64,000 nt of DNA from Bispira polyomma. Lineage: Eukaryota. This document shows positions 7,401 through 28,000 of this stretch, one piece after another; positions within the stretch are counted from its first letter, which is position 1, and each line of letters begins with the position of its first letter. The notes beneath the pieces were generated by a model that worked only from the letters and a program-made list of their open reading frames with translations, was not told the DNA's origin and did no database searches. The DNA is taken from NCBI GenBank assembly GCA_965649765.1, contig OZ287756.1, forward strand, positions 992,001 to 1,056,000, given 5' to 3'. The translations under genes and the position numbers were made by a program.

Positions 7401-8040
7401 ATAGAAATTTTTTTTTTTTTACATGTTTATACTATTTTAGCCAACTTAGCGGTAAATGTTCACTGAAACTTGAAAATGTTCACTGAAACTTAAAAATGTT
7501 CAATTTTGTATTACACAGATAGACGCTTTTTATTAGTATATTATTTTATGTACATCTAGAAGTTAGATAGTCAAATTTTAACATTATGCGGTAAAATTTT
7601 GAAGTTACTTGTAGAAGTTAGTTGTAATTGTTGTCAGACTCTACTGTAAAAGTGTTATGCGCAGTCTCGTAGAATCTAGAACAGACTCACTCCCATCTCT
7701 GCAGTCGAAGGTTCCACTACTCTGCCCAGATTTCCATTTACTTGCCGGGATATAATACACAATTAACAAAAAAAAGCTAATTTCTTTAACATCTACCCGG
7801 TTAAGTAGAAATCTTGCTTTTTTCTGATAGTACTAAACATCTATTTGATTTAGTAGGTTTGCAGCAACCAAAATCATGCTCTCCCAACATGTTTGGATAA
7901 TAGAATCTACCGTAATTACTTTTATTTTCTCTGCCAAGTATGGATGAATAAAAGTTATAAGATTCAATCAATTCTCTGTTACTCAACCATGTTTCTAAAT
8001 ATTGCAATTCATATTCAACCTTGTTAAAGTTTTTTAATAC

Positions 8041-8224
8041 TGAAGTGAAGAGTGGTCTTACTTTTCCACAGGTTGTTGACACTTCAGCTTCACGTATGGT
8101 TCTGTTTAAAACTCCCTCTCTTTTTCCCCAAGTCTCACCATTCCCATTTGTAAACACCGACATCTCGCCGAGATCTCGCAAAGTGCGAGACTTCGCGCGA
8201 GATTGCCGACCGCGGCTCACTACA
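8041..8224 (-). repeat. 3' LTR of the non-autonomous element
   Basis: Direct repeat of 13710..13884, preceded by the PPT and followed by the TSD. Confidence 0.92.
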
Positions 8225-8237
8225 TTCCTCCTCTTCT
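8225..8237 (-). promoter_or_regulatory. polypurine tract
   Basis: AGAAGAGGAGGAA immediately precedes the TGTAG start of the 3' LTR. Confidence 0.88.
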
Positions 8238-8798
8238 ATGAAAAGTTGGTGGTCTATCCTGAAGTGAAGTCAGGTAGTGGATCCTATCAGGAGCTGCTGT
8301 AATCTTTAGTTGATTATTTATCCTATGGGGAGGGGTTATTAAATAAACTCATTACAGCTCACGCTAAAGCTTAATTAGTCATTGAGCTACAATTTCAAGC
8401 AAAGCAGTAATGTCTGATTCGCAGAGGTTGGTATTCAATTCATTTTTGAAACCCAATACAAGTGAACTCAACTAGGTTTCCTCATACACTAAAGGATTAC
8501 AATTTTGTCTCCCAGCTTCCCAAAAACCCAACACACAGGATTATGGCTAAATGTAGGGAAAGCTAGACAGTTTTTGTTTGATGCTCATAGAACTAAATCT
8601 AATGAGCTACCTCAGTGGAGTACAACCAAACCACATTACCGGCTCAGCTGACTTTTGCCAAACCGGAATAACCCGGCTCAGTTAATGACAACCAGGTTAA
8701 CTCTGGTTGTCCCTATTACAGACTTCCTTACTTGGTTGAGGTTAATCAGAGTAATAGCCTCTCTGATTAACTCCTTGTACAGGTTCCCTGACAAACAA

Positions 8799-9676
8799 TT
8801 ATGATTTAGGGTTCCTTGCTTCCCGGGACACTTGCGATGACAACCTATTCCTTTCACCACATTGTGACTGTTGGTGAGGTCTTTTTGATAAAAGCTTCCA
8901 CACACTGGAGTTGTATGTGGTCTGTGGTTTCCTATACAACTCTTTAGATTCTTGGTTTCCATATCCAAAAAGATCCAACAAGTAGCTTAGTACTCGCCAA
9001 TGGATTAATGATGTGGCACAATTTGGTGGACTAACTGTTGGACAATATGGTAGATTATTTCCAGAAATCCAATATTGGAAATCCTTCATCAAAGCAAGAT
9101 CATCCTCAGATATGGCACATTTGGTTTTGGGAAACCATCTTCTTCTCAGCACTATTTGTAAGAGTCCATTTATTGAGAGACAACCCACATCTTTCGCAAC
9201 AAACAACAGAAGACTTTCATATTGCTTCATCTGTTCTTTAAGAGTCATTGCCGCCTTTGATGAAGTAAATCTAGGTAGATGCCTTCCTATGACATGTTTT
9301 TTTATGTGCGATGTTTCCACTTGACAATCACGGATAAAACAACACCTCTTCCTGGAATGATTTAGATTTGGTTGTATATTTCTCCTTTTATTCTTCCTAG
9401 CATCATCAGGTTGTGTTAAGTCTGTTCTGAGATTTTCATTTTTGAGGTAGCTTTTATTCCAGAATACTCTGGTTTTAACGGGAGAGTAAATATTTTTAGG
9501 CGAATGACAACTGCCACTCTTACCTTCCCCCTCTCTTCACCATTTAAATCTTCCTGCTGACTGCTACCCACAGTGCCTCCAACTTTGAAACATATATTTT
9601 TGCCACCATCGTTGGCAATACGTCCCAGTGGTTGGTGGGTTATGGCAGAGCAGTCCATAATTGTTACGGTCTCCAT
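8799..9676 (-). pseudogene. cargo ORF B: protein with a C2H2-like motif (frameshifted)
   Basis: The frame of ORF 8799..9320 stays open up to 9536 and gives RKRCCFIRDCQVETSHIKKHVIGRHLP (C-x4-C-x8-H-x4-H), then SPPNCATSLIHWRVL. Probably joined to ORF 9676..9416 at the C-run near 9530. Confidence 0.6.
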
Positions 9677-10677
9677 TGCACATGGACTTGTAACATTACT
9701 CTTGAATACTCTTGAAGACTCTCTTTCGGACCTGTATAACAGCTGCCTCCATATTTAGTTCCATTACAACAGGTGTACTCGACAATAATGGTTTGAACAG
9801 TGGTACACCCTTAAGGGTTTAGTAACGTAAACACAAAAACACGATGGCAATAAAGTATGATGCTTTATGAATGCTTATTTCTACTCTGTATAACAACTAT
9901 GATGGCTTTAAAAGTATACTTTAGTGAGATTTTTAACTATTTTTATATGTCCAAACTAATGAAAAGGTTAACACTTTACTATAAAACTATAAAAACACCC
10001 ATATAATGATTCTTGTATTGTAACGTCACACAATTTGAAAAACTATGTAGAACGTCATATCTGTAAACAAATCTCGCAGAGAGCCCTGTCTATTTTGACA
10101 TAATAAGAGTATTGATCCAGTTTATATCCGTACAAGATATACGCTACACAACTTTATAAAACATGTATATTATTTCTAGTGATTTACATTTTTCAATATG
10201 TTTCCTAACTTTATAAAAACAAAGAATATAAAAAAATCTTTCTGTTTAGAAGAGTGTAAGTTTAATATTTTTCTAAAATAAGCCCAGTTTTTGTGCTTTT
10301 ATTGAAAAACGAATTCATTCAAAATAATGCTGATGTTTTCCTTTTTCTAGTCATGTACAATACTTCAGTATTGATCCCTTCTTGGTATATAAATTGTGTC
10401 ACGTTTGTGAAGCATGTACTTTGAAAATATTACCCATTTTTGTTACAATTTAACACACTGCTATATGTATTGTATGTCTCAAGATACCTATTGAAATGAT
10501 ACATGAAAAATATAAATTAGTATATAATTAGAATATATGTCATTCTTTATTATTTCTACTCATGCAAATGTAAAAATGTTATCTATAAATCGACTTTAAG
10601 GCCACCCCCCAAAAAATGTGCTGTTTCTGAAAAGCTCAACCTCTCATAACGTGGTTATTGGCGATCGTTTTATGCGA

Positions 10678-11988
10678 TTACGTTACTAAAGCCTTAAATG
10701 GAGTTGAACATATTTGACTCCTTACTACCTCAGCATTTGCCATTGAAGAACTACAAGACAAACTTGATGCCTCCAACTGGCTTCCTAAAGATGAATTCAG
10801 GGAATCATTTTCACTATCTAACAGCAATGTGGAATTTAGTGCAAACCTTGAGCTGGATAGGGTAGATTCTACATCTGAGCCACATGACAGCAGGGATGAC
10901 ACTCATTGCCTTCTGAATCATGGTTAGCTTTATGTTTTCGGTATTTGTTGATTTCTCTCACCAGACCTCTTTTTTGCCGAATGTAAAGTTTATTTTGAGA
11001 TTCAAACTGCTGCTCCCCCACGACAATTTGTCGTTTCAACACCTTTAGTTCATGTTGTAGGTTTTTATTAATTATGCACAGCCTCTGGTTAGAATGGATG
11101 TCAGCACTAAGCTTTTCTTTTAAATCTGAGTTTTGCTGTTCTACTACCTTCAGGTTTCCTGTTAAAGCCGAAATTTGATTTGAAGACTGTTGAAAGCATT
11201 CTAAAACCCTCATAAGAGTTTGCCCATTCGATTGTATCGATTTAAAATGGGAATTTCTAAGTTCCTCCTCAACGGCTAGGTTTGTTGTCTTTAACTCATC
11301 TATTTTTCCTTCCTGGTCCTTACATTTACCTGCGAGGAAATCGAATTCCTTCGTCTAACTGACCAGTAACAGCTTCAATTTCTCTGAGCTTCTCTTTGTT
11401 TACCTCTGTCAACTTTAAGATCATAACCTCCTGATCTTTGCACTTTTCAGAGAGGAAATCGAATTCATTCATCTTACCCTCCAACTGACCCGGACCATTA
11501 ACAACTTCAACTTCGCTGAGCTTCCCTTGGTTCACTGCTTTCAACTTCAAGATTATGGCGTCCTGATCTTTGCACTTTTTGGAGAGAAAATCGAACTCAT
11601 TCGTCTTTCTTTCCAACTGACCTGAAATTACCCCTATTTCTTGAAGACTTTCCTTATTGGCCTTTCTCACATCAATAAGATCCTCCTCCATTAGTCTGAG
11701 TACTATCTGAAGAAATGTATCTTTACCTTTTCCCTTATCAAGCCCTGCCTTTACCTTTCTCGGGACATGAGAGGTATGAACATCCAGCACAATAAAAGAT
11801 AATGCCATCGCATCTTCCCTATTGCAATATTTACCAAGTTTGTTCTCCATATCCCTTCGCTGAAAGTCCTCTACTTTACAAGAGTGAGCTATGTCTGCTA
11901 ATTTTGAGTCATCCTCTTCTAAATAGTCACAGAAAGCTGCCCTTAGTTCCTCCTCAAATTTATCCCAGTCTACTGATATCTCTTCCAT
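10678..11988 (-). pseudogene. cargo ORF A: coiled-coil protein with three ~42-aa repeats and a Ser-rich tail (frameshifted)
   Basis: ORF 11988..11326 joins by a frameshift at ~11352 (third EFDFLxxKCKDQ repeat) into the frame of ORF 11213..10869. A probable second shift at ~10900 leads into the Ser-rich ORF 10902..10678. About 435 aa reconstructed. Confidence 0.7.
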
Positions 11989-13690
11989 TTTGAACTAGAA
12001 CATTAAAGTATGTTCACTGATTCTGTGAAGAGATATTTTAGTAAGATAACTTGCTAACTGTAATTATACCCACTTATGTCAAGGTTATTAAACCTCGTTT
12101 AACGAGTCAAGAATGACACAAGTTAGATGTAGAAACTTAGTCAAGGCCTTGAACAACTCAAATTACTGAGTCATGTGCAACCGTTACAAAGTTATGTTAA
12201 GCTAACAGCGAATCACAAGTAACCTATTAAACCAATCACAAAGTTGTGACTTTGCTCTAATTGAACTTCACAGTACACCTCGTATTGTTCATGAGTCACT
12301 GTCAGTCTTGATCAGCTGTTGTTGATTGTTTGCTGTTTGACAAGAAAGTTCACCAGATGTCTCAAATTGATAGCAATGTTTTTATTTTAATAATAATTTT
12401 CCCAGTAAGAATAAAAATTTCAAGATTATTCCAGTCGACAGCTTTGTTACTGTTATTTTCAAAATACCAGGTAGATATGTAAAAACTTACAACAAGATAA
12501 TATTCATTAGAATGGCCAAAGTATTATCCAGGAATTTTTAAGTAAGACCAATTTTCACCACAAGATATAAGATATAAACTCAACACCACAAAACACACTA
12601 CTAATTCTTCCACCTGGTTTAATCCAAGCAAACTCAACTAAAACTGGAAATATAATTGTGACTTTAGACAATAACCTCTTCTAATTTGATAAAGAGTTAT
12701 CTCAATTCAATAACCTTCCACAAAATATATCTGAAATCCGTGATGCAACTTTACAATCAACAGATGTATATCTCTATAAGGTAATGGACACTGCCACTCC
12801 TATAACTATATTTATTTTATTTTTATTTTCTCCTATAAATATAACTGTATCGATGAAATACCCTAAACCAGTACAATTTATTTTATCGACACTTGCGACA
12901 AACACCCTGATTTAGATACTGTGTATATGCTACAGCCAAATTATTTCACTAAGCAACAATGGAAAACAGTACCATAAAAACATCAACAGATTATCGCACC
13001 GAACGAACAGTACAAGCGTCAATGTATTAATGTTATGATAGCAGTACAATGGGTTCAAACAGTTTATACAAACAGAAGGGATGACGCCTCCGATTTTTAA
13101 CTGTATAGTTTAATATCTGTTGCTACTAATTTTATTAAATGGTATACTTCACTGCCTAGGCTATGGTACCAATTTATCTATTTTCATTCACTGGTACTTC
13201 ACCGCCAAGCACATTTGATATTGTATTTTTTATTTGTGGACAGGATAAAGGATTGATTACCTTCTGCTGTGAGTTTATTTTATTTGTTCATGAAATTCCA
13301 ATCACAAGAAAGAGGAATGTATTGCACCTCTTTCTGATTAGTTATTTATAAATTAAAAGTACATTTTACAACAGTCAGAAGTTTCAACTAAATCTCCTGA
13401 CTACAACCACAAATAATATAGATAATATTTCAAAAACACTATATATAAATTATATGTACTAAGTATATGGTATGTGAAGTAAAGGCACAGTAGCACAATA
13501 GATTCCAAGTACCACTGTCAGTACACTGAATAAAAATATGTGCTGTTCACGCTTCACTGCACACACACCAATATTGAACAATATTAAATAGAGTATAAAA
13601 TTCACAGTTATACCAAAACTGTGGAAAGAAAAAATATACTCTCCTTTATTTCAGTTGGAACCACCAGATACCTGTGGAGTATGAATATAT

Positions 13691-13708
13691 ACCCCACTTC
13701 TGGTACCA
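13691..13708 (-). promoter_or_regulatory. primer binding site, tRNA-Leu(UAA)-type
   Basis: TGGTACCAGAAGTGGGGT, 1 nt after the 5' LTR; complementary to the animal tRNA-Leu(UAA) 3' end ACCCCACTTCTGGTACCA. Confidence 0.88.
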
Positions 13709-13709
13709 A

Positions 13710-13884
13710 TGAAGTGAAGAGTGGTCTTACTTTTCCACAGGTTGTTGACACTTCAGCTTCACGTATGGTTCTGTTTAAAACTCCCTCTCTTTTTCCCCAA
13801 GTCTCCCCACTCCCGTTTGTAAACACCGACATCTCGCCAAGATCTCGCGAAGTGCGAGACTTCGCGCGAGATTGCCGACCTACA
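13710..13884 (-). repeat. 5' LTR of the non-autonomous element
   Basis: Direct repeat of 8041..8224 with TG...CA termini, followed by the PBS. Confidence 0.92.
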
Positions 13885-16592
13885 ATACTGTCAGAAAAAT
13901 TGGGGGCAAGTACATCAGTAACAGCAAGAACATGTTTTTCTCTTACTCTTATGGGCTGTAAAATACAGAGGGTTGTCTCTGTATAAATACCAATATTTAA
14001 CCTAATCTGTGAAGAAAACATGTTTTCAAAGTTTGTAAAGTTTGTATGTTTCATGTTGAAGAATGATCATTTCTATGTTAATAGAAATGCTAAACTTACT
14101 TTAAAATAAAGTGTTTCAATTTGACACTATCAAATATTTGTAATTGAACAAATCATATTTGTGAATGTAACTGTACCTCATTCTACTTATTTAAGTTTTG
14201 TATCAACTAAATAAATGTCGAGTAGAAACAATGTATTGAGTATTATATCGTTACATTATTAAATCAATAGTTGCACTAAAATTTGTCGTTTTTACTGCCT
14301 ATTCAAAGGATGCAGCTATTCTGACCTTATGTCATAAATGTTTGACCTTGGGTTATTAACTTTAATTAATTTCCGCAGATGTGTGAAGACTTCCAAACAA
14401 AACACAAGTGGTAGAACTACTAATCTTACAAAATACTACTAAAAGTCTGGAACTGGTGAAAATTTAAAGCCTAACGTCATTTATTTGTTTTTTATTGTTT
14501 TCAAGTTTCAATACATTCATTTACAGTGTCAAAACAGGTAGTTTACTGTGGGAAGTGTTTAGAACAACAAAGTATCGATCTGTAGCAAGTGTACTGCTAA
14601 CTTTCTAATGTACATGCTTAGTTCGAGATTTGAACCTGCAACTCCAAAGGTGGGAGGCGCGTGTTGCCATTACACCACCGAGACCCCTTTATGTTAATAA
14701 ACTATTTTTTGAGTAACATTACTGTTAATCTGTAAACTTGATCAACATTCACATTCCTAAAGCAAAACCACTATGATTCATCTGTCACACACTTGCTTTG
14801 GTATGCAGAGGACCATGCAGATACAGCCCAATACATAGATGACAATTTATATCTCTGTCATTGGATCCAACCCCATGTTTAGTGTGAAAACTAGGGACAT
14901 GATAAATGCTCATCTTTAAGCTTTTCTCTTCAGGTAGGAGAATAACATTACTGGTGCCGGATTGCTGTACTAGAGCTTTCAAAACAAAAGTTAAATAGCC
15001 CTTGAATACCAGATAAAAGTTACTACATAAGAGGACAAAGTGGAATACATTACAACACAAGTGCTCAGTATTTCAGCAAGAAAGTCTTGTGGATATAGCA
15101 CTCGTATCAGCTGAACTGTCATTTCAACAGATGATTTCTACAGCTTCTGGTACATGGTGACGCTGGGTTTGATCTTTGCTAAGTACCGAAATTGCTCGGA
15201 AACTTTTTCAGGACTAGAAATAATTTACTAAGCTAAAGTAATTTTTTTCTGAAATGACAAACTATTGTAATATCCGTGTATATCAGCACATTAAACACTC
15301 AGGCTTTTGGGGTTTCCTCTTTTTCTCAACTGTTAGTCTACTGGACAATTAATCTTAAAGATCCAAAGAGCCCCAGTTCTAATCCGAGTGACGGGAAGTT
15401 ATTTCTGTTCTTTACACTATAACAAATATTAAAGAATTTGTTAAATTTCTAGCTTAAAAAATAATAGAGATATCATAATTTAATCAATGTATGTTCACTT
15501 GAAAATACCAAGTTTTTTTGTACTTTTTATATAAAACATTTTCTTTTACTTCAGATATCTGCCAAATTGTCAATATTCAGTGGATTTTACTTCTGCAAAA
15601 ACAGTCACAAAAATTATAAATAGTGATGCAGAAAAACTGATAATAAAAATAACTACCTATGTCAGAATATGATAATAAGTATACAGGTTATTTAATATGG
15701 TAAGAGTTTGTATTAAAATATACTGGTATAAAATAGGCAAGATCAAACATTTACTGAATGGATTAAAATACAAGAAGAAAAACTGTGGAGATTTAATGTT
15801 CAATCTGGGTCCTGAAACGGCCAAGATAAATATGTGGCCGTTTTCAAATTACCAAGGTTGGCATTAGGGCAGTTACACACATACCCTAGCGCCTGTGGTG
15901 TATACTTGCAGTTGCTGGATTTTGAAAAAAAGAACGCCGAATATTTATTAATAGCCCAAATCTACTGCAGATAACAATTTCCTAAAAAATATGGCGTGAA
16001 AGCTCATTTTTTTGCCATCCCTGTGCTTTTTGTTGCATCAAAATCTGTTGAGAAACAGCCGAGATATTTAAGTTTCAATATTTTTATGACCAAAATTCCA
16101 TTAAAACTTGTTCTTACATAACATTCAATACATGCTATTCCCTTTACATGGCATTCCATTGGTGTCAAGTGCCATTCCTTTACATAACATTCCATTGGTG
16201 TCAAGTGAGGTATAGCAGTCCCTAAATTCCATTCCCACATCACATTCTAAATTCCATAAATACCTTCAAAATCCTAAAATTGCTATTGAAACTATATAAA
16301 GCTTAGTCCACAGACACACAGTTAGTTGAAGTGGAGGCTGGAGTGAAGCTAGAGAGAGCCTAATAAAGATTAGTGGGAGTCAGTTGGATTCATGTAACTG
16401 TTATGGTTACATCTCTTACTTGGATAATTATTATGTAAGTGTCGTGCTGTTTACTAATAAATGTTGTGACAGTGATCAAGTTTATCTTTTCTTGTCTTCA
16501 TACTTCCTTGAGATAAAAGATCCCAGCTGATATGGGGTTAAACTGATTAGCAAGAGGTCAAGACTGACCACTGAAAATAACCTCGTAACAAT

Positions 16593-16610
16593 TGGTGGAG
16601 ATGCCGGGTA
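16593..16610 (+). promoter_or_regulatory. primer binding site, tRNA-Ala-type
   Basis: TGGTGGAGATGCCGGGTA, 2 nt after the 5' LTR end. Confidence 0.85.
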
Positions 16611-16641
16611 TTTCATAAGAAGTCATGAGACATGGACAAAC

Positions 16642-18095
16642 ATGCAAGATAATATACAATCATCCGATGTTAGTTCTACCAGCTACCCTTACGCGGACAA
16701 CGAGACCACACTTTCTAGTATCAGGGCCTTTTCCATACTTAGGTCAAACGTCACCACTACTGCATGGACATATGGCTTCCCCTACTGTAAATTTCAAAGG
16801 GTAACTACCAAGAAAGTAACAACACATATCCGAGCAGAACATGGTTGCTACCCAGTGGCAATAGAAGTGTCCACAGAATGAATTTGAACTGTGCTGACAA
16901 CAGCAACTGCAATTTTAACTGCTTATAATTTTAATTTAGCATCCTGGAAACTCAAACAAAGCCTCCGAGGGTAACAAGTTACTATCACTTGAGGACAAGG
17001 ATGGCAAATCTAGATCTAATGGCTCAAAAATATTGAAGAATTGGGGGCTGAACTCCACCGACTCGCTAATCAAGGAGACGTACAGGGTGGGCTCCAGGAT
17101 CAGCTTCAACAACGACTTGCAGACCAAAGGGATCAACAAGAGGAATATCACACCCAGCTGCAGGAGGCTATTCAACAACGTGGACCTTTTCCAGAGACTG
17201 CTGCATTACGGCCTGCTCCTTATAGAAGAACTTCCAGTGAAGGTGCCAACCGATGGATGAAACGCTTTGTGAGTTATGCAGAGTACGGTAATATGAATGA
17301 ACATAGGAAATCAAGAATGTTTCGATTGCTTTTAGAAGGGACTGCAGAGGTTTGGTATGGGAGTTTGCCAGAAGATGTTTGTCAACATTGGGACGAAGTG
17401 CACACAGCATTCTCTGAGAAGTTTATAAATGCAAACAACCTGACATGGCTTAAGGAGCAAGGGCTTTTCTCAAGGGTACAATTCCCTACAGAATCAGTGG
17501 AGAGTTATATTACTGATGTGAGACAGAGATGTGACCAACTACAAAAAGGAGAAGCTGAGACCAGGAGTATCATCCTTCGAGGATTATTGCCTGGCATTAA
17601 AGATTTTGTTATAGGCCACCAGCCAGAAACAGTTGATGATCTTGAAAGCAAAGCCAGGCTGGCTGAAAGTATTGAGAAGCTCAAGCCTAAAGACCACCAA
17701 GGTTATAGAATAAATGTCTTACAAGAAAATCACCTTACAAAGACCTTACAAAGCTAATTGGAGAGCTCCAGGAAACTATAAATCAACAGAGGAGGGACAT
17801 GGTTTTTCTAAAGAGTAGCTTGACCAGGGATAAGCCCAATCAAAACACTGCACCAGGGAGAGGAAATTTCCAAATGTTCTGTAATAGATGTCAAGTTTAT
17901 GGTCACACTGTTAGTAACTGTGTGAGACGTCCTCAACCTGGAGATTTAGTGTGCTTCAAATGCAATAGAAGAGGTCATAATAAACAGGATTGTCCACAAT
18001 TTCAAAGAAAACAACAAGGTTTCAAGCAACAGGATGCTCGTTTAAACTGGAGTGCGCCTCAGGTGGGGTCTGGGGTGCAACAGAGGAGGTTTTAG
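16642..18095 (+). pseudogene. gag: Gypsy gag (frameshifted)
   Basis: Capsid-like region (LLEGTAEVWY...FSRVQFPTESVESYI) in 17041..17757. Two CCHC knuckles, CNRCQVYGHTVSNC and CFKCNRRGHNKQDC, in 17799..18095. The N-terminal start is uncertain. Confidence 0.9.
18041..18079 (+). promoter_or_regulatory. -1 programmed ribosomal frameshift signal (gag to pol)
   Basis: Slippery heptamer T-TTA-AAC in the gag frame, 5-nt spacer, stem TGCGCCTCAG/CTGGGGTGCA. The protease frame is -1 relative to gag. Confidence 0.8.
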
Positions 18096-21000
18096 TTGCT
18101 CTCACCCCTAAAGGCACCATCACCCCTAATGACAATACAACTAGTGGACTTACATTTTTGAAGTTGAAAAAGGATAATAAGAATGTTTATGCCTTGGTGG
18201 ATTCAGGCGCTACTACATCTCTGGCAGGACCTGAACTTTTATAGATGTTTCCCACACATGAAATACAACCATACAATGGATGCGCTACAACAGTTTCAAA
18301 AGAGGTTATAAATATTAAAGGGGTGATTCCATTTTCATTTAATATAGAAAGTCAGAACATTAGTTGGGAATTGAAGTATGTTACTTGCATGCCCTACCCA
18401 GTCTTACTTGGAATAGATTTCTTACAAGCATTCGGTGTGTGCTTGGACACGATTAAAATACCAAAGACACTTGATGTGTACATGCAAGCTGATTATCAGC
18501 TGAATCCAGGAGAAGAGACATTGCTTTATGGGACTCTAAAAGAACCATTAGATGTTATTGCTGCAGCAAAAATAGATCCCTGCCCTTTTGGAATTTTACA
18601 ATCTACCAATACGAGATGTGGTATTACCAACATCAAACCAAGAAATCCGCTAGTGCCAATTGAGCTAAGGAATACAACAGATATTCCTATGTGTTTTGAA
18701 AAGGGTGATTGTGTTGCACACCTGGAGGTGCTTGGAGAGAAGGATTGTGTACAAGTCATAGAGTCAAGTGGGTATGCTGGTAATTATGAGACCCAAACAG
18801 AAAACACCATTTCAAGACAAGAATTTGAAGAACTGTTTAAATGGAGCAATGGTTCGCTTTCCGAGTCGCAAGAAAGGCAGTTAAAAGATGCTCTGTGGGA
18901 TTATAGAAACCTTTTTCAAGTACCAGGGAAAGAATTAGGATGTACCCATGTTCTTAAACACGAAATAAACCTAGGACCGGGTAATAGAACATTTAGGTCT
19001 GCTCCAGCAATCGCAGCAACCCAAGAATAAGAGATGAAATATCACAGCAAGTACGAGATATGAGTGAAAAGGGAATTATACGACCTTCTTGTAGTCCATA
19101 TGCTTCACCGGTGGTTATGGTTGAAAAGCCAGATGATTCCTGGAGATTTTGTGTGGATTATAGGATTCTAAATTCGAATACTATACCAGATAGTTATCCA
19201 ATAGCTCGGGTGGATGATTCTTTGGAATCTTTGGGAAGTTCAAAGGCCTCATATTTTTCTACTCTTGACTTGGAGAGCGGATATTGGCAAATCGAGATGG
19301 CTCAAGAATCCAGGCCACTGACTGCTTTTGTCACTCATGATGGGTTATATGAGTTTGAAAGAATGCCTTTTGGATTGCGGAATGCACCTTCTACGTTTCC
19401 AAGACTTATGACAAGTGTGCTCCAAGGTCTTTTATGGAAAATTTGCCTGGTCTATCTTGATGATATTATCATTTATTCACAGACTTTTGATGAACATTTA
19501 GAAAGATTGAAAATTGTTTTTGATAGGTTAGAGGCTGCAAATCTCAAATTAAAACCAAAGAAGTGTGTGTTCGGTTGCTAGAAGGGGCGATTTGTAGGGC
19601 ATGTAGTTAGTGCAAAGGGAGTAGAGCCCTTACCAGATACTTGCAAGGTTATTCAGGAATTCTCAACACCAACAAATCTTAGAGAATTACGCAGTTATTT
19701 AGGAATCACAAGCTTTTATCGTCGGTTCATAAAGAAGTACTCAGAACGGGTCTTACCCCTATCAGAACTTACAAAGCAAGACACTCCATTTGTTTGGGGA
19801 GAAGCTCAAGAAAGATCTTTCCAAGATTTGAAAGATGCTTTGGTAAATCCCCAATACTAGCTTACGCCAGATACCAGCAACCATGCATACTGTATACTGA
19901 TGCTAGTGGCCATACAGCTGGCATGATCCTTAGCCAGATTCAAGATGGAAAGGAGAGGGCTATATCTTATGCTGCAAAGAAATTCACAGATGCAGAGAAG
20001 AAATATGGTATCTCAGAACTTGAAGCTTTAGCTTGTATACTTGGAGTGAAACATTTTGAGCCATACCTAAAAGGTAATAAGTTCAAGATAGTGACAGATC
20101 ATATAACCTTAAAGTGGCTCTTTGATCAAAAGAAAACAACTGGTAGAATTGCAAGATGGGTTACCTATCTCCAACAGTATGAGTTTACTATTGAACATAG
20201 AGCAGGCAAGAAGTTGGGTAATGTAGATGGCCTGAGTCGGCAAAATGGTGTTCTACCAAGAGAAGACAATGATCTTGAAGTAATAGATGAAACTATCCTT
20301 CCGCCATTGACTGATGTGCCCAACTACTCTTCAAATCAGTGCACAAAAGAAGGCAAGTTACTGAATGATCAAGAACATGTAAAAGACATGTCTGTTGGTG
20401 AAGCGGTCTTTTAAATATCTGACCAGGACAAAACAGTATCTGATGACCATCAACAAAATTCCACCAGTAATAGCCCCACAAGACAGACCATTGAACAACA
20501 GCATCAGGGTATGTCTGCAATGACAAGGAACCCCTGGATAAATCGACCAAAGGCCCTTGGCGATATCAGACCTGACCTATCTACTGGCGAACTACGTAAA
20601 CTACAAGAAGCAGATCAGCATATTAACTCAACTCTACAATATTTGGAAGAGAACGTGTTACCACCTAATGCAAGAGAGGCTCGTCGATTGGCTATTACAA
20701 GTCAAAATTATGAAATCATTGATGATGTGCTATATCATATATGGTACCCAGATGGTTTGGGAACAAATGGAAGACTGATATTGCAGTTAGTGGTACCCAA
20801 AAGTCTCACTCATGATGTCTTAACAGCATCACATGGGGATGTTTCTGCAGGGCACTATGGAATACGGAAACCTATCAGACCTTGAAACTATATTATTATT
20901 GGGCAGGTATGATGCGAGATGTTACAAACTGGGTTCAATCCTGCCACCTTTGTACTACTACTAAGAAGCCAACCAAACCATACCGATCTAATCTCCAACC

Positions 21001-22304
21001 ATTGTCTTGTTTCCGCCCTGGTGACTGCTGGGCCATGGATATCCTAGGACCACTAAAAGAAACTTACTCTGGGTCAAAATATATATCCTTGTTTTCCTTG
21101 ATTATGCTACAAAGTGGGTTGAAGCTTTTGCTATTCATGACACCAAAGCACATGTCATAGCTCGACTTCTTGTTGATGAAATAGTATTTCGCTTCTCAGC
21201 TCCGAGGAAGTTATTGTCAGACCTTGGAAGTAATGTTGTGTCCCGTGTTGTTAATGAAGCAGCTCAGTTGGTAGGAACACAACGACTTGTAACCTCTCCA
21301 TTCCATCCCCAAACTGATGGTGCAGTTGAAAGATTCAACTACTCTCTGGTAAAACAACTAACTACACTTGTGGATGCTAGGGACAGGGACTGGGACAGAT
21401 TTATCAGACCTGTGTGCTACGCATATAACACCACAGTATGCAGTGATACAACACACTACCAACCCTTTTATTTGATGTTTGGGAGAGAACCATTTAGCCC
21501 AATCAGTACTACCATGCCAAGTTTTCAAATACAAATGATAAAGCCTACATTAAAGAAATGGTCCAGGGGTTGGCATTTTCCCATGAGGTAGTACAGGAAA
21601 ATATAAAACATCACAAGGAGAAAATGAAAGAACAATATGACAAAAAGTCATATTCTATTGAATATGAAGTGGGACAGCGTGTCTGGGTGTACTTTCCTTC
21701 TATGAAAGTGGGAGAAATCAGAAAATTTCATAGGAAATATGAAGGCCCTTTTATAATTGTCAATCAAGTACATGAAAAGAATTATAAACTTGTGAGGGCC
21801 CATGATCTGAAACCTTTGAAAAACATGGTACATGTTAACAGATTGAAACCATATGTATCTAGGGATGTCAAACCACCAATTGATGAAGAACTAGATGAAC
21901 TGTTAGGTACAAAGGTTACTGAGGAGGATATTGATGAAATCTGGAGTGACACAGAGCAGGACCGACATACTGTGGATGTAACAGAAACTAATATGGACAC
22001 ACCTCTTTCAGATATCTTTCGTGAAAAGGAAACTAATGAAGCTAGTGATGACCAGGGTGATGCTCAACTGGAGGGAGATCCCCTTGAAAATAGTACTCTT
22101 AACCTGACAGCTAGCAGTACAGGAAGACCGGACCAGATAGAGCAAAATCTAGCAAATAGTATGGAGCCAATAGCACAAAGTCTAGAACAACCCAAAAATA
22201 TTGAATCAGTGTTACAGCGGTCAACTCGACAAAGAAGACAAAGATTTCCACTACTAGACATTGTGGAAGAAGACAGTGAGTCTGGATCAGACTCTGATAA
22301 AGAA

Positions 22305-22499
22305 TAAGTTGTAAACCGCATAATAAAAGGAAGGTATAATAAACATGGGGACTTAGAATATTTAATTGATTTGAAGGATTACCCTTCAGAAGCTCACACT
22401 TATGAACCTTATAAGAATCTTAATAGTGTGGCTAGGGAATATATTGCTACTCATAATGTACCCATATGTGGTACAAAGCCCAAAGTCAAACAGCTCTAG
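22305..22499 (+). other. integrase C-terminal chromodomain, not in the ORF track
   Basis: In frame after the TAA at 22305: VVNRIIKGRYNKHGDLEYLIDLKDYPSEAHTYEPYKNL, matching the chromodomain pattern Y.V..I......EYLV.W..Y......WEP..NL. Confidence 0.8.
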
Positions 22500-22582
22500 A
22501 TTACCTGTCATTAAGTTGATTTTCCTTCTATTTTGCAGTGACCAAAAGAAGTGTTGGTGTTGCTAGTGTCAAATCAAGAAAA

Positions 22583-25083
22583 ATGAAGATGATGTTTTGG
22601 ACTACTCTGCTACTTGGTTATCTGGGTTTGAAATCCGCTACTTGTGATGGGAATGCTATTATAAGAGAAGACATGGGAGTTGTCTTCAAACATGTAGCAA
22701 GTGTAGAAAAGTTTGCTTCATCGTCACACAGTTGCTATAAAGTTAGCAACCATGGATGAGCTCAGGATACAGGATCCATTTTGTCATAGAAAATGGGATA
22801 TTGAACATAAAAAGTTCATGAGTAAACTTTGTGAGATGTATTCTCCGATTTTTGAGACATATGATGACGTCAGAAACCTCCTGGCCAGAGGTAAGCTGGA
22901 AAAATTCCTGGGAGTGAGGAATTTAAAGAGCAGAGTAGCCAGGTCTCCTTTTGACTTTATTGGAAGTATTTCGAAGAGCTTGTTTGGCACTGCTACATCA
23001 AAAGATGTTGATCTATTGAAACAACACATAATAGCTTTAGAAGAACATCCTGAAAATTTCAGTGGATTCCGGAAATTTGCAACAGAATTGTTTTCTATAC
23101 AAGTTACAACCAACAAGAATTTTAAAATTGTTCAAGAAGGTATCAACTCCAATAGAAGATTAATCAACTACACCATTCAAGGAATGGGAAATTTAAGGGA
23201 CTCACTTAAAGATTGTTTTAGATGATGTCAAAGCCCACATCGAACTCTTGAGGCAGGTTATTGCAATGATGCATGGAATAAATTCACGAGAAATAAGTAC
23301 CATGCTTCTGGTGACAACAGAGCTGGAAAAGTTCATATCAGGATGTGACTCTCTACTACGAGGATATATTCCAGTACAAATTATAACCCCACATGATTTG
23401 AAGGATATCCTAGATAATGTATCTAGCTATTTACAGTTGCATTATCCTAATTACCAGATAGTTTACAGGCAGCCAGCAAGCTATTATCAAATGTCTGGAA
23501 TAATTACATATGCCACCACTAAGAATCATTTATTTGTCAAAATTAAAATTCCTTTGAGTACCAATTCAGTTTTGTTTGATGTCTTTAGAGTGAGTAGCAT
23601 CCCAATAAGTTTCGGTAGAAACAATATATCGTTTACTAAGGTTAAGGGGCTACCAGATTATTTAGGGATCAGTAAAGATGCAATGTTTTTCTCTGAAATT
23701 GACAAAGTTACTTTTGATAGTTGTGAAGGTATTACTCTTAAACGCTGTAAGGTTTCTTAAAATTTATACAGTAGAAATGATTTAACATGTGCCAGTGCAA
23801 TGTATTTAGGGCATAAGAATAAGATACAGGATGAATGCAAAGTAATATTGTATCCAAATACCTCAACTATTCAAACCCACGTTATTGATCTAGATCAGGA
23901 GAGAGTTTTTGTTAGCACAAATGACAACAAGTGGATAAAAAGTTGTACAAGACAACCTCCACAGGTTTTAGAAGGATGTAGAAATTGTATCATTAAACAG
24001 TGTGAATGTTCCATTAAGGGTAGCTCTCTGTATATTGCCCCAAGCATTGAAGCATGCTCAAAGAATCAGACTAACCACTTTGAACTGGTACCAAATTATA
24101 TGGCTGCCCTGTCATATTTTAAGCATATAGATTCTGAGTTGCTGTTGAATGTTAATAATACTTTCTTCAGGAAGGTATTAGCATCAACAGTTAATTTCCC
24201 TGACATTACTCTGTCCAAGAGCCCTTGGGTACAAAAGACACTTGGCTTACAAAATAGGGAACTAGCCCTAGATTTACATAGTGCTCTTACAACAATGCAG
24301 GATAACCAAAGTTTATTTATTGACCCCCTTGATGCTTGGTTAGATGACATGTCAACTTTACCTCAATCCTCCCATTATATGATAAGCTTCGAACTGATTG
24401 CTTTCCTAGCACTAGGACTAAGTGTAGCTTTAAGTCTTGTTTTAAATCTAAGCATGAGGAGGCACCTAACATCATTGGAAAAGACTATCCACAGAAGAAT
24501 CCCTGAATTATTGGCACTAAGTACTTGTATGCCCCGTACTGCAGCACAGGAAGCCTCTTGCACTAGACAGAGAAACCTAGAGCTATATGTAGTTTCATTA
24601 TTGACTGTAGGTATTGTGACTATTGTCGTGTATCAACTAGTTAAGTGTATAAAATATGTTTTGAGGCCAGTACTTAATAATTCTGCCGCCCTTACCAGAG
24701 CCCTAGACTCCCAGAACACTCTGGTACAGTTGATTCTCACAGATTTACAAAAGACACTGTCTGTTACAGTTCTAAGATTACCCATCCCTATTGCTGAAAT
24801 AGTTTATTCCAACCCTAAGCATACAAACCATTTGTCTACAAGATTTCCTTATCTGGAAATAGATTGGAATACCCTGATTATTTCATCTAAAACGACAGGT
24901 CAACAGATTGTCCTTCCAAATGAGGTGAACTTGGGATTTCTTAACTATTTTAGATACACCCAAATAAAAGCCAGACCAATGATAATGAGAGTCATTCTAG
25001 TAAACTCACTACGGTCTGTGACCATTATGCAGCAGGCTATAAATATCCCCCTTAAGAGAAGTGTCACCATAAGTTCTTTTTGA
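22583..25083 (+). pseudogene. env: env, baculovirus-F/errantivirus-like fusion glycoprotein (2 frameshifts, 1 stop)
   Basis: Signal peptide MKMMFWTTLLLGYLGL; RVAR|SPFDFIGSISKSLFGTAT cleavage site and fusion peptide; heptad region; Cys-rich ectodomain with N-x-S/T sites; TM LIAFLALGLSVALSLVL. Preceded by splice acceptor TTTCCTTCTATTTTGCAG (ends 22538). Confidence 0.88.
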
Positions 25084-28000
25084 AGAAAATATACCTCCAC
25101 CATCCTCCATCTGTGAGCGTGACGATATTCCCATATGAAAATGGTTTTAATCAGCTATCCTAGTTCATTGTGGTGATCTTGTCACAACATGGAACAAAAA
25201 GGGTGACAACAGCATGTATTATTTAAGGTTACTTTATCACTGTAGTTCAATCCTCAAATAGTATTACCACTCCATCTTGATTGCCAATTCACAAGGACTA
25301 CTCTTATAGTAATTTGCATCTACCGTAATTTTCGTTGCCAGTAATTAACTAGCCCATGCCTGGGATAGTTTTGGTAAAAGGTTTATTTTGTTGTGGCAAA
25401 TGTCATTGCATTCCTACAAATCATGAATGCTTATTATCAGACCAATACCATCTGTAATGCAAATATTCCAGCACTCCTGCAGTAATTTAGGGTCAGCATT
25501 TCCCAGATGTTCCAATGTGACACAAATAGTATATAAACCCAATCTGGATTATCTACATTCCCCTATTCCCTGTGACGGACTCAATTATCATACTTAGAAA
25601 GCTCGCAATAAACAAGAATACTAAATACAATTCCATAACACTTCTGAAGCCTCACTACTCATTAACCTGATAATACCATCTGGAATGAACCTACCAGAGA
25701 TGTGAAACGACATATACAGAATACTAAACCATGTAATCAACTGTTATTAGGCTCATCTCGTGTAGCCATGCCTATACACATTCCTAGGATTGGGATTCAC
25801 TTTACAAGCTAATGTGCTTCAATTTATATATTTAGACACTATATGTATTGGTGTAGCTGCTGTGTTGCATGTATGTAAAAATGTATATTAGTGGTAGTTT
25901 AGCTATACACATATATATGTATTTAACATTTAAAAAAAAAAAAAAAAATCAAGAAAACAGGGTAAAACAATTTTTTTTTATAAATTTAAAGCCAGTCTTA
26001 AAGTGTTTCTCCAAGCAGAAGCTACCCCCCTTCGGGTTGTATATCTACTCATCTCTGTCCCAAATGAGGCAATCAGTACTACTAATAGAGTTTGCATGTG
26101 ATAAATTTTTGGAATGTGAGTAAACAAATTTTGGCAATTAATAACGGTCATGGGACCATCATCAACAGAACAATCTATAGCTAAAAGGTTTTTTAGACGT
26201 GACTATTATTTGTTCCTTGATTGCACTGTGTCTATATAAGGGAAACTTTGGGATGTCAGATTCCCATACACATTCTTGAGCATCTATAGTGTACACTCAA
26301 TACTGGAGAAGAGCAAAACAAAGTAAAATAAAGTTAACACTTGTGAAGTAAAATAGTATACAAGTTCTTGTTTAAAACAAAGCTGTTGTTTCAAAAGTGT
26401 TGAGAAAAAAAAAGGGGGGACAAAATAAATATCCAAGGACACCACAAAAGGTATGTGCAGATGTATTTCATAAATAAGGTAGTATGTATATGAATATGAA
26501 TAATTCAATAAGGACTTTATCTGTATTCAACACATAAGGCCTAACTTGTAAATTAAGTAAATTTGTAATTGTTTTCATAAAAAGGACAGAACGGAGGGTA
26601 ATTGTTTAATTATATAATAATAATAGATTTGTACATTTATGTTTGTGTATTTAAATACAGTATATAAATACATGTTTCGGTATGTGCTTGATTAGTTGCA
26701 TTCAGTGTTTTGAAACCTATACCAATAGCTATGATATGTTATAATAGGGAAATATAATAATTCTGAATAATAAGTGATCAATGGGGTTCTCTTTGCGCGA
26801 AAAAAAAAAAAAAAAAAAAATGTGTGTGTTTATCTTCCAAGTAGTACAATGTAATTCAGTGTACATTATTAGTACAGGTTTTATACCGTCATTATAATAA
26901 CATATAATAGATAACTTTTACATCATATTTTATAAGTGTTGTTTAATCATATATTTCAAGTTTAATGGTCAATGTCATAGAAAGGTTAGTGAGTTATAAT
27001 CATCGGCATGTTGTATTAATAGGGTAGTTTTCTGCTATATACTTATGAATGTGTGTGTATAATAATATAATATTTGGTTTCCCTGTTAAAGAGGTGTATC
27101 CATTAAGCCATAAAGGTGTAAGTATTTGCTTTTTAGGTTACATCTCTTACTTGGATAATTATTATGTAAGTGTCGTGCTGTTTACTAATAAATGTTGTGA
27201 CAGTGATCAAGTTTATCTTTTCTTGTCTTCATACTTCTCTGAGATAAAATATCCCAGCTGATATGGGGTTAAACTGATTAGCAAGAGGTCAAGACTGACC
27301 ACTGAAAATAACCTCGTAACAATACGCATACCCCTCTTTTCTGGCTTTTTTGGAGTGGGCGAAAATATAGGATTTATTTGCAAATAAGCTGGTTAAATAT
27401 TGTGTCACACAACAAAATTTGTGTAATATAATAAGAATAATATATAAATTATTTAAAAAATATATATATTCCCGATTTGCCTTTGTTAAGCTTTGGTAAG
27501 TACTATTTAGACATTATTCCAATTGTCTAGTCAGATGTTTTAACACTTTATATGTATGAATTAGTTCTCTCCAGTGTGGGTAACATTACCTGTTTTATCA
27601 AACACTCTAGATTGTTACGGAATGGAGGTGTTCTTGTGGAAAGTTAAGGTAGGTTTTGAAACACACTTCTAGACATTCCAATCTGATTTATACTGTAAAC
27701 GGAATATTGGAAACACACTAGTGGAGGTCCCACCTATTATAGACATTCCACAACAAAAGTTGTCTTAAAAAAACACAGGCAGTGTGAAATACAGTGATGT
27801 TTGTGTTCTTGTAAACTTGGGAGCCGTCCAAGTCTGAGATCTTGCTCCAAAATTTAGTATCGACGTAATGTAAATTAAGTCTTTTGTTAGTGATTAAAGT
27901 ACGGCACAATTCCACACTAACGCCTTTTGTGTTGGATCTCTATATTCCAGTGTGGCGTATGAATATGTAGAAATTCTACCATGTCTTTCATTTCCATGTG

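What the first reader, a model, noticed from the sequence alone, without database searches (positions are those of the whole stretch)
8041..13884. LTR vehicle with all cis signals but no gag/pol, carrying two unknown genes
Seen: ~97% identical short LTRs, an 18-nt tRNA-Leu PBS, a PPT and a 4-bp TSD. The 5.5-kb interior has no retroelement enzyme motifs and instead holds two sense-strand cargo ORFs separated by AT-rich spacers. Established: non-autonomous LTR elements (LARD/TRIM) are mobilised in trans and are usually non-coding. Inference: a satellite-like retroelement that spreads accessory genes using a Gypsy helper, possibly Gmr1-like given the Leu PBS and 4-bp TSD. This is the strongest candidate here for an undescribed system.
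Basis: partly seen in the sequence, partly recalled or inferred. Interest (0 to 1): 0.82.

Follow-up and report, generated by a model that had tools for sequence, protein, structure and literature searches.

The report
Pol-less LTR element with own gene
This is a dead copy of an abundant jumping-gene family that has lost the usual retrotransposon enzymes. It keeps one conserved protein gene of its own, part of which it shares with an extra gene of the Gypsy elements that probably copy it.

Summary
The element lies on the minus strand at 8041-13884. It has 175/184-bp LTRs, an 18-nt PBS that exactly matches this genome's tRNA-Leu(UAA), a PPT and an ATAC target duplication.

It is not a one-off deletion. 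Eleven other copies, two diverged subfamilies in this genome and a contig from another public assembly all lack gag/pol.

The "two cargo genes" are fragments of one ORF of about 770-860 aa. Here it is broken by frameshifts and by a nested 879-bp piggyBac-type MITE. The ORF has an N-terminal domain, a coiled coil, a Ser-rich linker and a zinc-finger plus helical module. Between subfamilies dN/dS is 0.14-0.30 in the module, 0.33-0.37 in the N-terminal domain and about 0.8 in the linker.

The module also heads the zinc-finger-TatD nuclease ORF3 of two Gypsy families in this genome. Both use the identical PBS. One has similar LTR tips and the same 4-bp ATAT-type target duplication. That clade is the likely helper. 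It shows the canonical RNase H to integrase order, not the Gmr1 order.

The protein's function is inferred only. No copy examined here is intact.

Verdict: new variant of a known kind, of moderate interest. Earlier notes of this scan record the TatD-Gypsy elements elsewhere in this genome.

The parts
13710..13884 (-). 5' LTR (175 bp). It starts TGTAG and ends CACTTCA. It has a private 9-bp deletion just inside the outer tip.
13691..13708 (-). 18-nt primer binding site for tRNA-Leu(UAA), after a 1-nt spacer (T at 13709)
13734..13742 (-). U5 arm of a 9-bp stem that brackets the PBS
   Evidence: Conserved in subfamilies A, B and C; also read in L045.
13670..13678 (-). Leader arm of the U5-leader stem. 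It also reads as a possible splice donor, CAG|GT.
11989..13690 (-). 1.7-kb non-coding, AT-rich leader. It has no gag/pol relics and is patchily conserved with subfamily B.
11326..11988 (-). ORF piece 1: ATG, conserved N-terminal domain, and the start of the coiled coil built from 132-bp (44-aa) tandem repeats
10678..11213 (-). ORF pieces 2 and 3 (rest of the coiled coil, start of the Ser-rich linker), in two further frames
9815..10693 (.). Nested piggyBac-type MITE, private to this copy. The TTAA duplication is at 9811-9814 and 10694-10697.
9416..9814 (-). ORF piece 4 (Ser-rich linker continued)
8799..9500 (-). ORF piece 5: zinc finger plus helical module (about 8937-9353) and the C-terminal tail. 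The stop codon is at 8799-8801.
8225..8237 (-). Polypurine tract, abutting the 3' LTR
8041..8224 (-). 3' LTR (184 bp)
8037..8040 (.). Target-site duplication ATAC. Its partner is at 13885-13888.

Best explanation
Window 8041-13884 (minus strand) is one decayed copy of a multi-copy, non-autonomous LTR retrotransposon family.

Architecture:
- The layout is short LTR, 1-nt spacer, tRNA-Leu(UAA) PBS enclosed by a U5-leader stem, a 1-1.7 kb non-coding leader, one ORF of about 770-860 aa, a PPT and the second LTR.
- There is no gag, protease, RT, RNase H or integrase.

How it moves (inferred):
- Replication is done in trans by a clade of Ty3/Gypsy elements in the same genome.
- These use the identical PBS and carry a zinc-finger-TatD nuclease ORF3.
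- One of them (L022) has similar LTR tips, a 1-nt spacer and a 4-bp ATAT target duplication.

The ORF:
- It is the family's own gene: a conserved N-terminal domain, a long coiled coil, a Ser-rich linker, then a C2H2-like zinc finger fused to a helical domain.
- The same finger-plus-helical module heads the helper clade's ORF3.

Proposed function (inferred, about 30-35% on its own):
- The protein acts as an oligomerising, nucleic-acid-binding adaptor.
- It would use the shared module to place the element's RNA or cDNA complex into the helper's particle or pre-integration complex.
- This would stand in for the missing gag, much as LINE-1 ORF1p or the hepatitis delta antigen serve their RNAs.

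This copy: the ORF is broken by at least four frame changes and by a nested TTAA-flanked MITE. That breakage produced the appearance of two genes.
For: Shown:
- LTRs, PBS, PPT and TSD are as stated.
- Eleven other copies are collinear at 93-97% with no extra coding block.
- LTR search gives 185 candidates. There are 42 exact LTR-end-plus-PBS sites. Protein searches give 571 candidates (subfamily A) and 635 (subfamily B).
- Matching 4-bp TSDs of the RTAY type occur in 8 of the 10 copies checked.
- Subfamilies B (L012, L013, L018, L021) and C (L044) have related LTRs starting TGTAGTGA, the same PBS and stem, and the same ORF architecture.
- Contig L045 from another assembly shows ORF, PPT, LTR, PBS, a 0.94-kb leader and the ORF start, with open frames of 604 and 170 aa.
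- dN/dS between subfamilies is 0.14-0.30 in the module (0 of 500 bootstraps with pN>=pS), 0.33-0.37 in the N-terminal domain and about 0.8 in the linker. Within subfamily A it is 0.67 and not different from 1.
- A profile of the module finds 78 proteins, and the long ones carry TatD_DNase.
- L022 and L046 are Gypsy elements with RNase H then integrase, the identical PBS and a finger-TatD ORF3. L022 ORF3 matches our module at E 8e-31.
- L022 has LTR tips TGTGGTGA and TTTACTTTA, a spacer T and TSD ATAT.
- The module folds confidently, pLDDT 96.4.
- In the module tree the non-autonomous rows form one clade (support 90/87) among TatD-linked rows.
- The MITE is shown.
Against: - The helper link is circumstantial. 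Every helper copy examined is itself defective: L022 lacks the gag-to-RT region, L025 lacks ORF3 and L046 is fragmented.
- LTR bodies are not alignable with the family beyond the tips and the PBS.
- No intact copy of the family's ORF was seen in this genome, so present activity is doubtful.
- The protein's role is inference only. No RNA data could be obtained, no binding test was run, and the module has no solved structural relative.
- The coiled coil is called only from marginal Pfam hits and repeat composition.
- The module tree is midpoint-rooted, so the direction of transfer is not established.
- The organism behind contig L045 is unknown. It could be the same or a close species.
Confidence: 0.62

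Rival explanations
1. The ORF is a highly divergent Gag, so this is a 'gag-only' non-autonomous LTR element. It would supply its own particle protein and borrow only pol.
For: It is the first and only ORF after the leader. It has an oligomerising coiled coil and a zinc finger, as many Gag/NC proteins do. It is under purifying selection.
Against: There is no Pfam gag, capsid or zf-CCHC hit. The finger is C2H2-like, not CCHC. The finger module is homologous to the head of ORF3 in the env position of Gypsy elements, not to their gag region. The N-terminal domain has no PDB sequence relative. The N-terminal half was not folded.
Confidence: 0.18
2. The ORF is an ORF3-derived accessory factor that acts on the host or on the helper, for example against silencing or as a competitor or regulator of the helper's TatD protein. 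It would not be part of the copying machinery.
For: The module is shared with an accessory gene and is promiscuous across protein architectures. The TatD domain has been lost without trace.
Against: Nothing specific. This reading explains the selection equally well, but not why the element can do without gag.
Confidence: 0.15
3. It is a one-off internal deletion of an autonomous Gypsy at this locus, or a captured host gene carried as cargo.
For: None beyond the absence of gag/pol in this copy.
Against: All 11 other A copies, 4 B copies, 1 C copy and the foreign contig share the gag/pol-less layout at different loci, and 8 of the 10 whose flanks were compared have matching TSDs. All genomic matches examined lie in element copies. 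No intron-bearing host paralogue was seen.
Confidence: 0.04

Closest known systems
LARD / TRIM non-autonomous LTR retrotransposons
   Same: They have LTRs, PBS, PPT and TSD, lack pol, and are mobilised in trans by an autonomous partner that shares the PBS and LTR tips.
   Different: LARDs and TRIMs are defined as non-coding inside. This family keeps one ORF of about 800 aa under purifying selection across subfamilies.
TelKA2n and the ORF3-bearing LTR elements of bdelloid rotifers (PMC5408684)
   Same: LTR retrotransposons there carry varied non-env ORF3s (DEDDy exonuclease, GDSL esterase, coiled-coil types). One non-autonomous family lost most of gag-pol but kept its ORF3.
   Different: The host group and ORF are different. 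Here the retained ORF shares only one module with the helper's nuclease ORF3 and has no nuclease. The gag/pol-less form has itself split into subfamilies sharing only 39% amino-acid identity.
Gypsy elements with a zinc-finger-TatD ORF3 in this genome (L022, L046; earlier scan notes)
   Same: They have the identical tRNA-Leu(UAA) PBS and a homologous finger-plus-helical module. L022 also has the 1-nt spacer, similar LTR tips and a 4-bp ATAT-type TSD.
   Different: They encode pol and a TatD nuclease. Their LTR bodies and leaders are unrelated to this family. They have no N-terminal domain or coiled coil.
Mouse ETn/MusD and IAP deletion variants
   Same: A non-autonomous LTR family out-numbers and depends on a coding partner.
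   Different: ETn has no conserved ORF of its own. IAP variants encode gag-pol fusion products.
LINE-1 ORF1p / hepatitis delta antigen (works-like only)
   Same: A coiled-coil oligomerisation region is joined to a nucleic-acid-binding domain, encoded by an RNA that depends on other proteins for spread.
   Different: There is no sequence or fold relationship. The analogy is functional and untested.

Membership tests
LTR retrotransposon (structural definition) | Two direct LTRs with TG..CA tips | tested here: met
   The LTRs are 175 and 184 bp, 97% identical, and run TGTAG...CTTCA.
LTR retrotransposon (structural definition) | A tRNA-complementary PBS next to the 5' LTR and a PPT next to the 3' LTR | tested here: met
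   There is an 18-nt exact match to the genome's own tRNA-Leu(UAA). A 13-nt purine run abuts the 3' LTR.
LTR retrotransposon (structural definition) | A target-site duplication of fixed length at independent insertions | tested here: met
   4-bp TSDs are present in 8 of the 10 copies checked.
Non-autonomous LTR element (LARD/TRIM sense) | No RT, integrase or protease anywhere in the interior, in the family as a whole | tested here: met
   Pfam and tblastx are negative. All 12 A copies, 4 B copies and 1 C copy are collinear.
Non-autonomous LTR element (LARD/TRIM sense) | A non-coding interior | tested here: not met
   There is one conserved ORF with dN/dS 0.14-0.37 in two domains.
Non-autonomous LTR element (LARD/TRIM sense) | An identified autonomous partner with matching LTR ends and PBS | tested here: inconclusive
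   L022 shares the PBS, spacer, tip motifs and TSD, but its LTR body is unrelated and the copies are defective.
Ty3/Gypsy (for the putative helper) | Domain order RT, RNase H, integrase, with an H2C2 finger and an rve core | tested here: met
   In L022 RT_RNaseH comes first, then Integrase_H2C2 plus rve, then Integrase_p58_C. L046 has the same order. The RT core itself was not seen in L022.
Gmr1-like Gypsy | Integrase placed upstream of RT | tested here: not met
   RNase H precedes integrase in L022 and L046.
Retroviral/Gypsy Gag (for the ORF) | A capsid-like domain and/or a CCHC knuckle | tested here: inconclusive
   There is no Pfam hit and the finger is C2H2-like. The N-terminal half was not folded.
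Zinc-finger-TatD ORF3 family | A finger-plus-helical module followed by a TatD_DNase domain | tested here: not met
   The module is present (E 8e-31 to L022 ORF3). No TatD relic was found in any family copy.
piggyBac-type MITE (nested insert) | TTAA duplication, terminal inverted repeats, no coding capacity, high copy number | tested here: met
   TTAA is present on both sides, the inverted arms are 29 nt and there are more than 5000 candidates. The transposase partner was not sought.

The most novel reading that the evidence does not exclude
This is a lineage of 'satellite' LTR retroelements that has done without gag and pol for a long time. It has diversified into several subfamilies and appears in at least one other assembly. 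It survives because it encodes its own adaptor protein. That protein would use a module borrowed from, or shared with, the helper's nuclease ORF3 to enter the helper's particle or pre-integration complex. This would be a retrotransposon counterpart of a satellite virus that carries its own antigen.
Probability: 0.3. Interest if true: 0.8.

Novelty: new variant of a known kind. Interest (0 to 1): 0.55.

Why it matters
Non-autonomous LTR elements are usually treated as non-coding passengers. This family keeps a single non-gag, non-pol gene under selection through subfamily splits. That gene shares a confidently folding but structurally unmatched zinc-finger module with a nuclease gene of the likely helper. 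This suggests that hyper-parasitic retroelements can evolve their own proteins to exploit helpers.

It also marks out an undescribed domain family: 78 relatives, often fused to TatD nucleases in retroelement ORF3s. And it gives a concrete handle on what that ORF3 does.

For annotation, it shows that two 'unknown genes' can be one ORF split by a MITE.

Tried and rejected
- Pfam scans of all ORF pieces and of the least-interrupted ORFs of subfamilies A, B and C gave only marginal coiled-coil noise.
- A word-index protein search with the 739-aa open frame of L010 found nothing.
- An ESM Atlas feature search was uninformative.
- The first fold, with a 9-row alignment, failed at pLDDT 36. The second, with 34 rows, succeeded.
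- Foldseek against the PDB, VIA wide search and Atlas shape search gave no convincing fold relative. The best Z was 4.3, and only the small finger resembles C2H2.
- PDB sequence-profile searches for both conserved domains were empty.
- The neighbouring Gypsy at 16398-27323 was considered as helper and rejected, because it has no matching PBS.
- Gag/pol relics in the leader: none.
- TatD relics downstream of the module: none.
- Similarity of the ORF's N-terminal half to L022 or L025: none.
Expression, splicing and small-RNA targeting are therefore untested.
- No complex prediction was sent, because no intact helper partner was in hand.
All comparisons used natural copies.
Full report
**Observation**

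The window is G000:C9:992001-1056000 of a 1.04-Gb assembly. Direct repeats lie at 8041-8211 and 13710-13880 and are 97% identical.

Reading both ends and comparing other copies places the element on the minus strand. Its LTRs start TGTAG and end CACTTCA.
- The 3' LTR is 8041-8224 (184 bp).
- The 5' LTR is 13710-13884 (175 bp), with a private 9-bp deletion near its outer tip.
- One spacer T follows the 5' LTR, then an 18-nt PBS at 13691-13708.

The genome holds 12 sites with the matching tRNA 3' end. ARAGORN calls those examined tRNA-Leu(UAA). The pattern is unique in the window, where 0.04 matches are expected by chance.

A 13-nt purine tract at 8225-8237 abuts the 3' LTR. ATAC flanks both ends, at 8037-8040 and 13885-13888.

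**It is a family, not an accident**

- An LTR search of the genome gave 185 candidates. Many sit in pairs about 5 kb apart.
- Eleven such pairs were fetched. All are collinear with the window copy at 93-97% over the whole interior.
- An exact LTR-end-plus-PBS pattern occurs 42 times.
- Protein searches with the ORF gave 571 and 635 candidates.
- Independent copies have their own 4-bp duplications, mostly of the form RTAY: GTAT, ATAC, ATAT.
- Within copies the two LTRs differ by 3-10 substitutions, so insertions are moderately old.
- None of these copies holds any retroelement enzyme.
- The 1.7-kb leader shows no gag/pol relic by tblastx.

**One gene, not two**

In copy L010 a 739-aa frame stays open across the region that the window copy splits. 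Its last 80 or so residues are out of frame, after a deletion of about 219 bp inside the C-terminal module.

The window's minus-strand ORFs are successive pieces of that one ORF in different frames. They are 11988..11326, 11213..10869, 10902..10678, 9676..9416 and 9500..8799.

The window copy alone carries an extra 879 bp at 9815-10693.
- This is a member of a repeat with more than 5000 candidates.
- It is flanked by TTAA on both sides and has 29-nt inverted ends.
- It is therefore a piggyBac-type MITE nested in the ORF. It is the AT-rich 'spacer' (GC 0.28).

The window copy is dead. It has at least four frame changes, the MITE and the LTR deletion. None of the twelve A copies has an intact ORF.

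**Subfamilies and spread**

Subfamily B comprises L012, L013, L018 and L021.
- Its protein is 39% identical overall to that of subfamily A.
- It has the same LTR start (TGTAGTGA), the same LTR end and the same PBS.
- Copy L012 has a single in-frame stop.

Subfamily C (L044) is a 3.8-kb element with related LTRs, TSD ATAC and a 689-aa open frame of the same architecture.

Contig L045, from another public assembly of unknown organism, shows the same layout. It reads ORF, PPT, LTR, spacer T, identical PBS, a 0.94-kb leader and then the ORF start. Its open frames are 604 and 170 aa.

A 9-bp stem between U5 and the leader brackets the PBS in A, B and C. The same two arms can be read in L045.

**The protein**

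The architecture is as follows:
- a conserved N-terminal domain of about 80 aa;
- about 200 aa of probable coiled coil, partly built from 44-aa tandem repeats;
- a Ser-rich linker of about 250 aa;
- a C2H2-like finger fused to a helical domain with an SPPN...HWR motif;
- a tail of about 100 aa.

dN/dS between subfamilies:
- module: 0.14-0.30, with 0 of 500 bootstraps reaching pN>=pS;
- N-terminal domain: 0.33-0.37;
- linker: about 0.8.

Within subfamily A the ratio is 0.67 and not distinguishable from 1, as expected for decay after insertion.

With a 34-row alignment the module folds at pLDDT 96.4. It has no convincing solved relative.

**Link to a helper clade**

A profile of the module found 78 proteins in 1.84 billion. 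The long ones carry TatD_DNase after the module, including a Pecten maximus protein. In another assembly the module sits between an integrase gene and a TatD gene.

In this genome the bare PBS occurs 63 times. One site lies 6 kb upstream of a TatD match.

That locus is L022, a Gypsy-type element.
- It has RNase H and then integrase domains.
- It has a 750-aa finger-TatD ORF3 whose head matches our module at E 8e-31.
- Its PBS is identical and its spacer is T.
- Its LTR tips are TGTGGTGA and TTTACTTTA.
- Its PPT is purine-rich and its TSD is ATAT.

A second Gypsy family (L046) shares the PBS. Its RNase H and integrase are 60-65% identical to those of L022, and it also has a finger-TatD ORF3.

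In a tree of the module the non-autonomous rows form one clade (support 90/87) among TatD-linked rows. The root is midpoint only.

No TatD relic remains in the family. The rest of the ORF has no counterpart in L022 or L025. The neighbouring Gypsy in the window has a different PBS.

**Interpretation**

Shown: this is a long-lived, gag/pol-less LTR lineage with complete cis signals and one selected ORF. That ORF shares a module with the ORF3 of Gypsy elements using the same primer. One of those elements (L022) also has similar LTR tips and the same TSD.

Inferred: those Gypsy elements supply RT and integrase. The protein acts as an oligomerising adaptor or nucleic-acid binder that replaces gag.

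Rivals are a divergent Gag, or an accessory factor unrelated to copying.

The Gmr1 idea is not supported, because RNase H precedes integrase.

The closest precedent is the bdelloid rotifer case. There LTR elements carry varied ORF3s, and a non-autonomous family kept its ORF3 (PMC5408684). Full-text searches found no paper that links TatD to LTR retroelements as an ORF3.

**Limits**

- RNA evidence could not be obtained.
- The helper copies examined are defective.
- The organism of L045 is unknown.
- The N-terminal half was not folded.

Noticed in passing
window 9815-10693: An 879-bp piggyBac-type MITE with a TTAA duplication and 29-nt inverted ends. More than 5000 candidate copies at 84-98% identity occur in the genome, so the family is very abundant and fairly young.
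   Followed up: partly
window 13670-13678 and 12040-12050 (minus strand): The leader arm of the PBS stem reads CAG|GT in all subfamilies, like a splice donor. A pyrimidine-rich run ending in CAG lies about 40 nt upstream of the ATG. The 1.7-kb leader could therefore be an intron of an ORF3-style subgenomic mRNA. This was not tested.
   Followed up: partly
L001, L002, L005, L006, L008-L010: In 7 of 12 subfamily-A copies the two LTRs of one element differ by a roughly 11-bp indel in addition to point changes. This may reflect template switching between co-packaged variants.
   Followed up: no
P0005, P0011, P0013, P0026, P0027, P0038: Other proteins carry the finger-plus-helical module at their C-terminus with no TatD. 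They share a different upstream motif resembling a CUE/UBA-like helix pair. The module is therefore promiscuous.
   Followed up: no
P0074: A TatD protein with two tandem copies of the finger-plus-helical module.
   Followed up: no
L022 vs L025: Copies of the same Gypsy family are complementary deletion forms. L022 lacks the gag-to-RT region but has ORF3. L025 has the 5' part and integrase but lacks ORF3. A pair of LTR hits 11.6 kb apart on C2 may be a longer copy; it was not fetched.
   Followed up: partly
L012 763-1983 (minus strand): A 406-aa ORF of an unrelated element lies near the subfamily-B copy. Pfam was not run on it.
   Followed up: no
L019 1448-2618: A non-LTR (LINE-type) reverse transcriptase fragment is inserted just after the LTR and leader start of a family copy.
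   Followed up: no
L017 (G000:C3:12384014-12387034): A tandem array of tRNA-Ser(UGA), tRNA-Leu(UAA) and tRNA-Ala(UGC) genes. It supplies most of the genome's copies of the primer tRNA.
   Followed up: no
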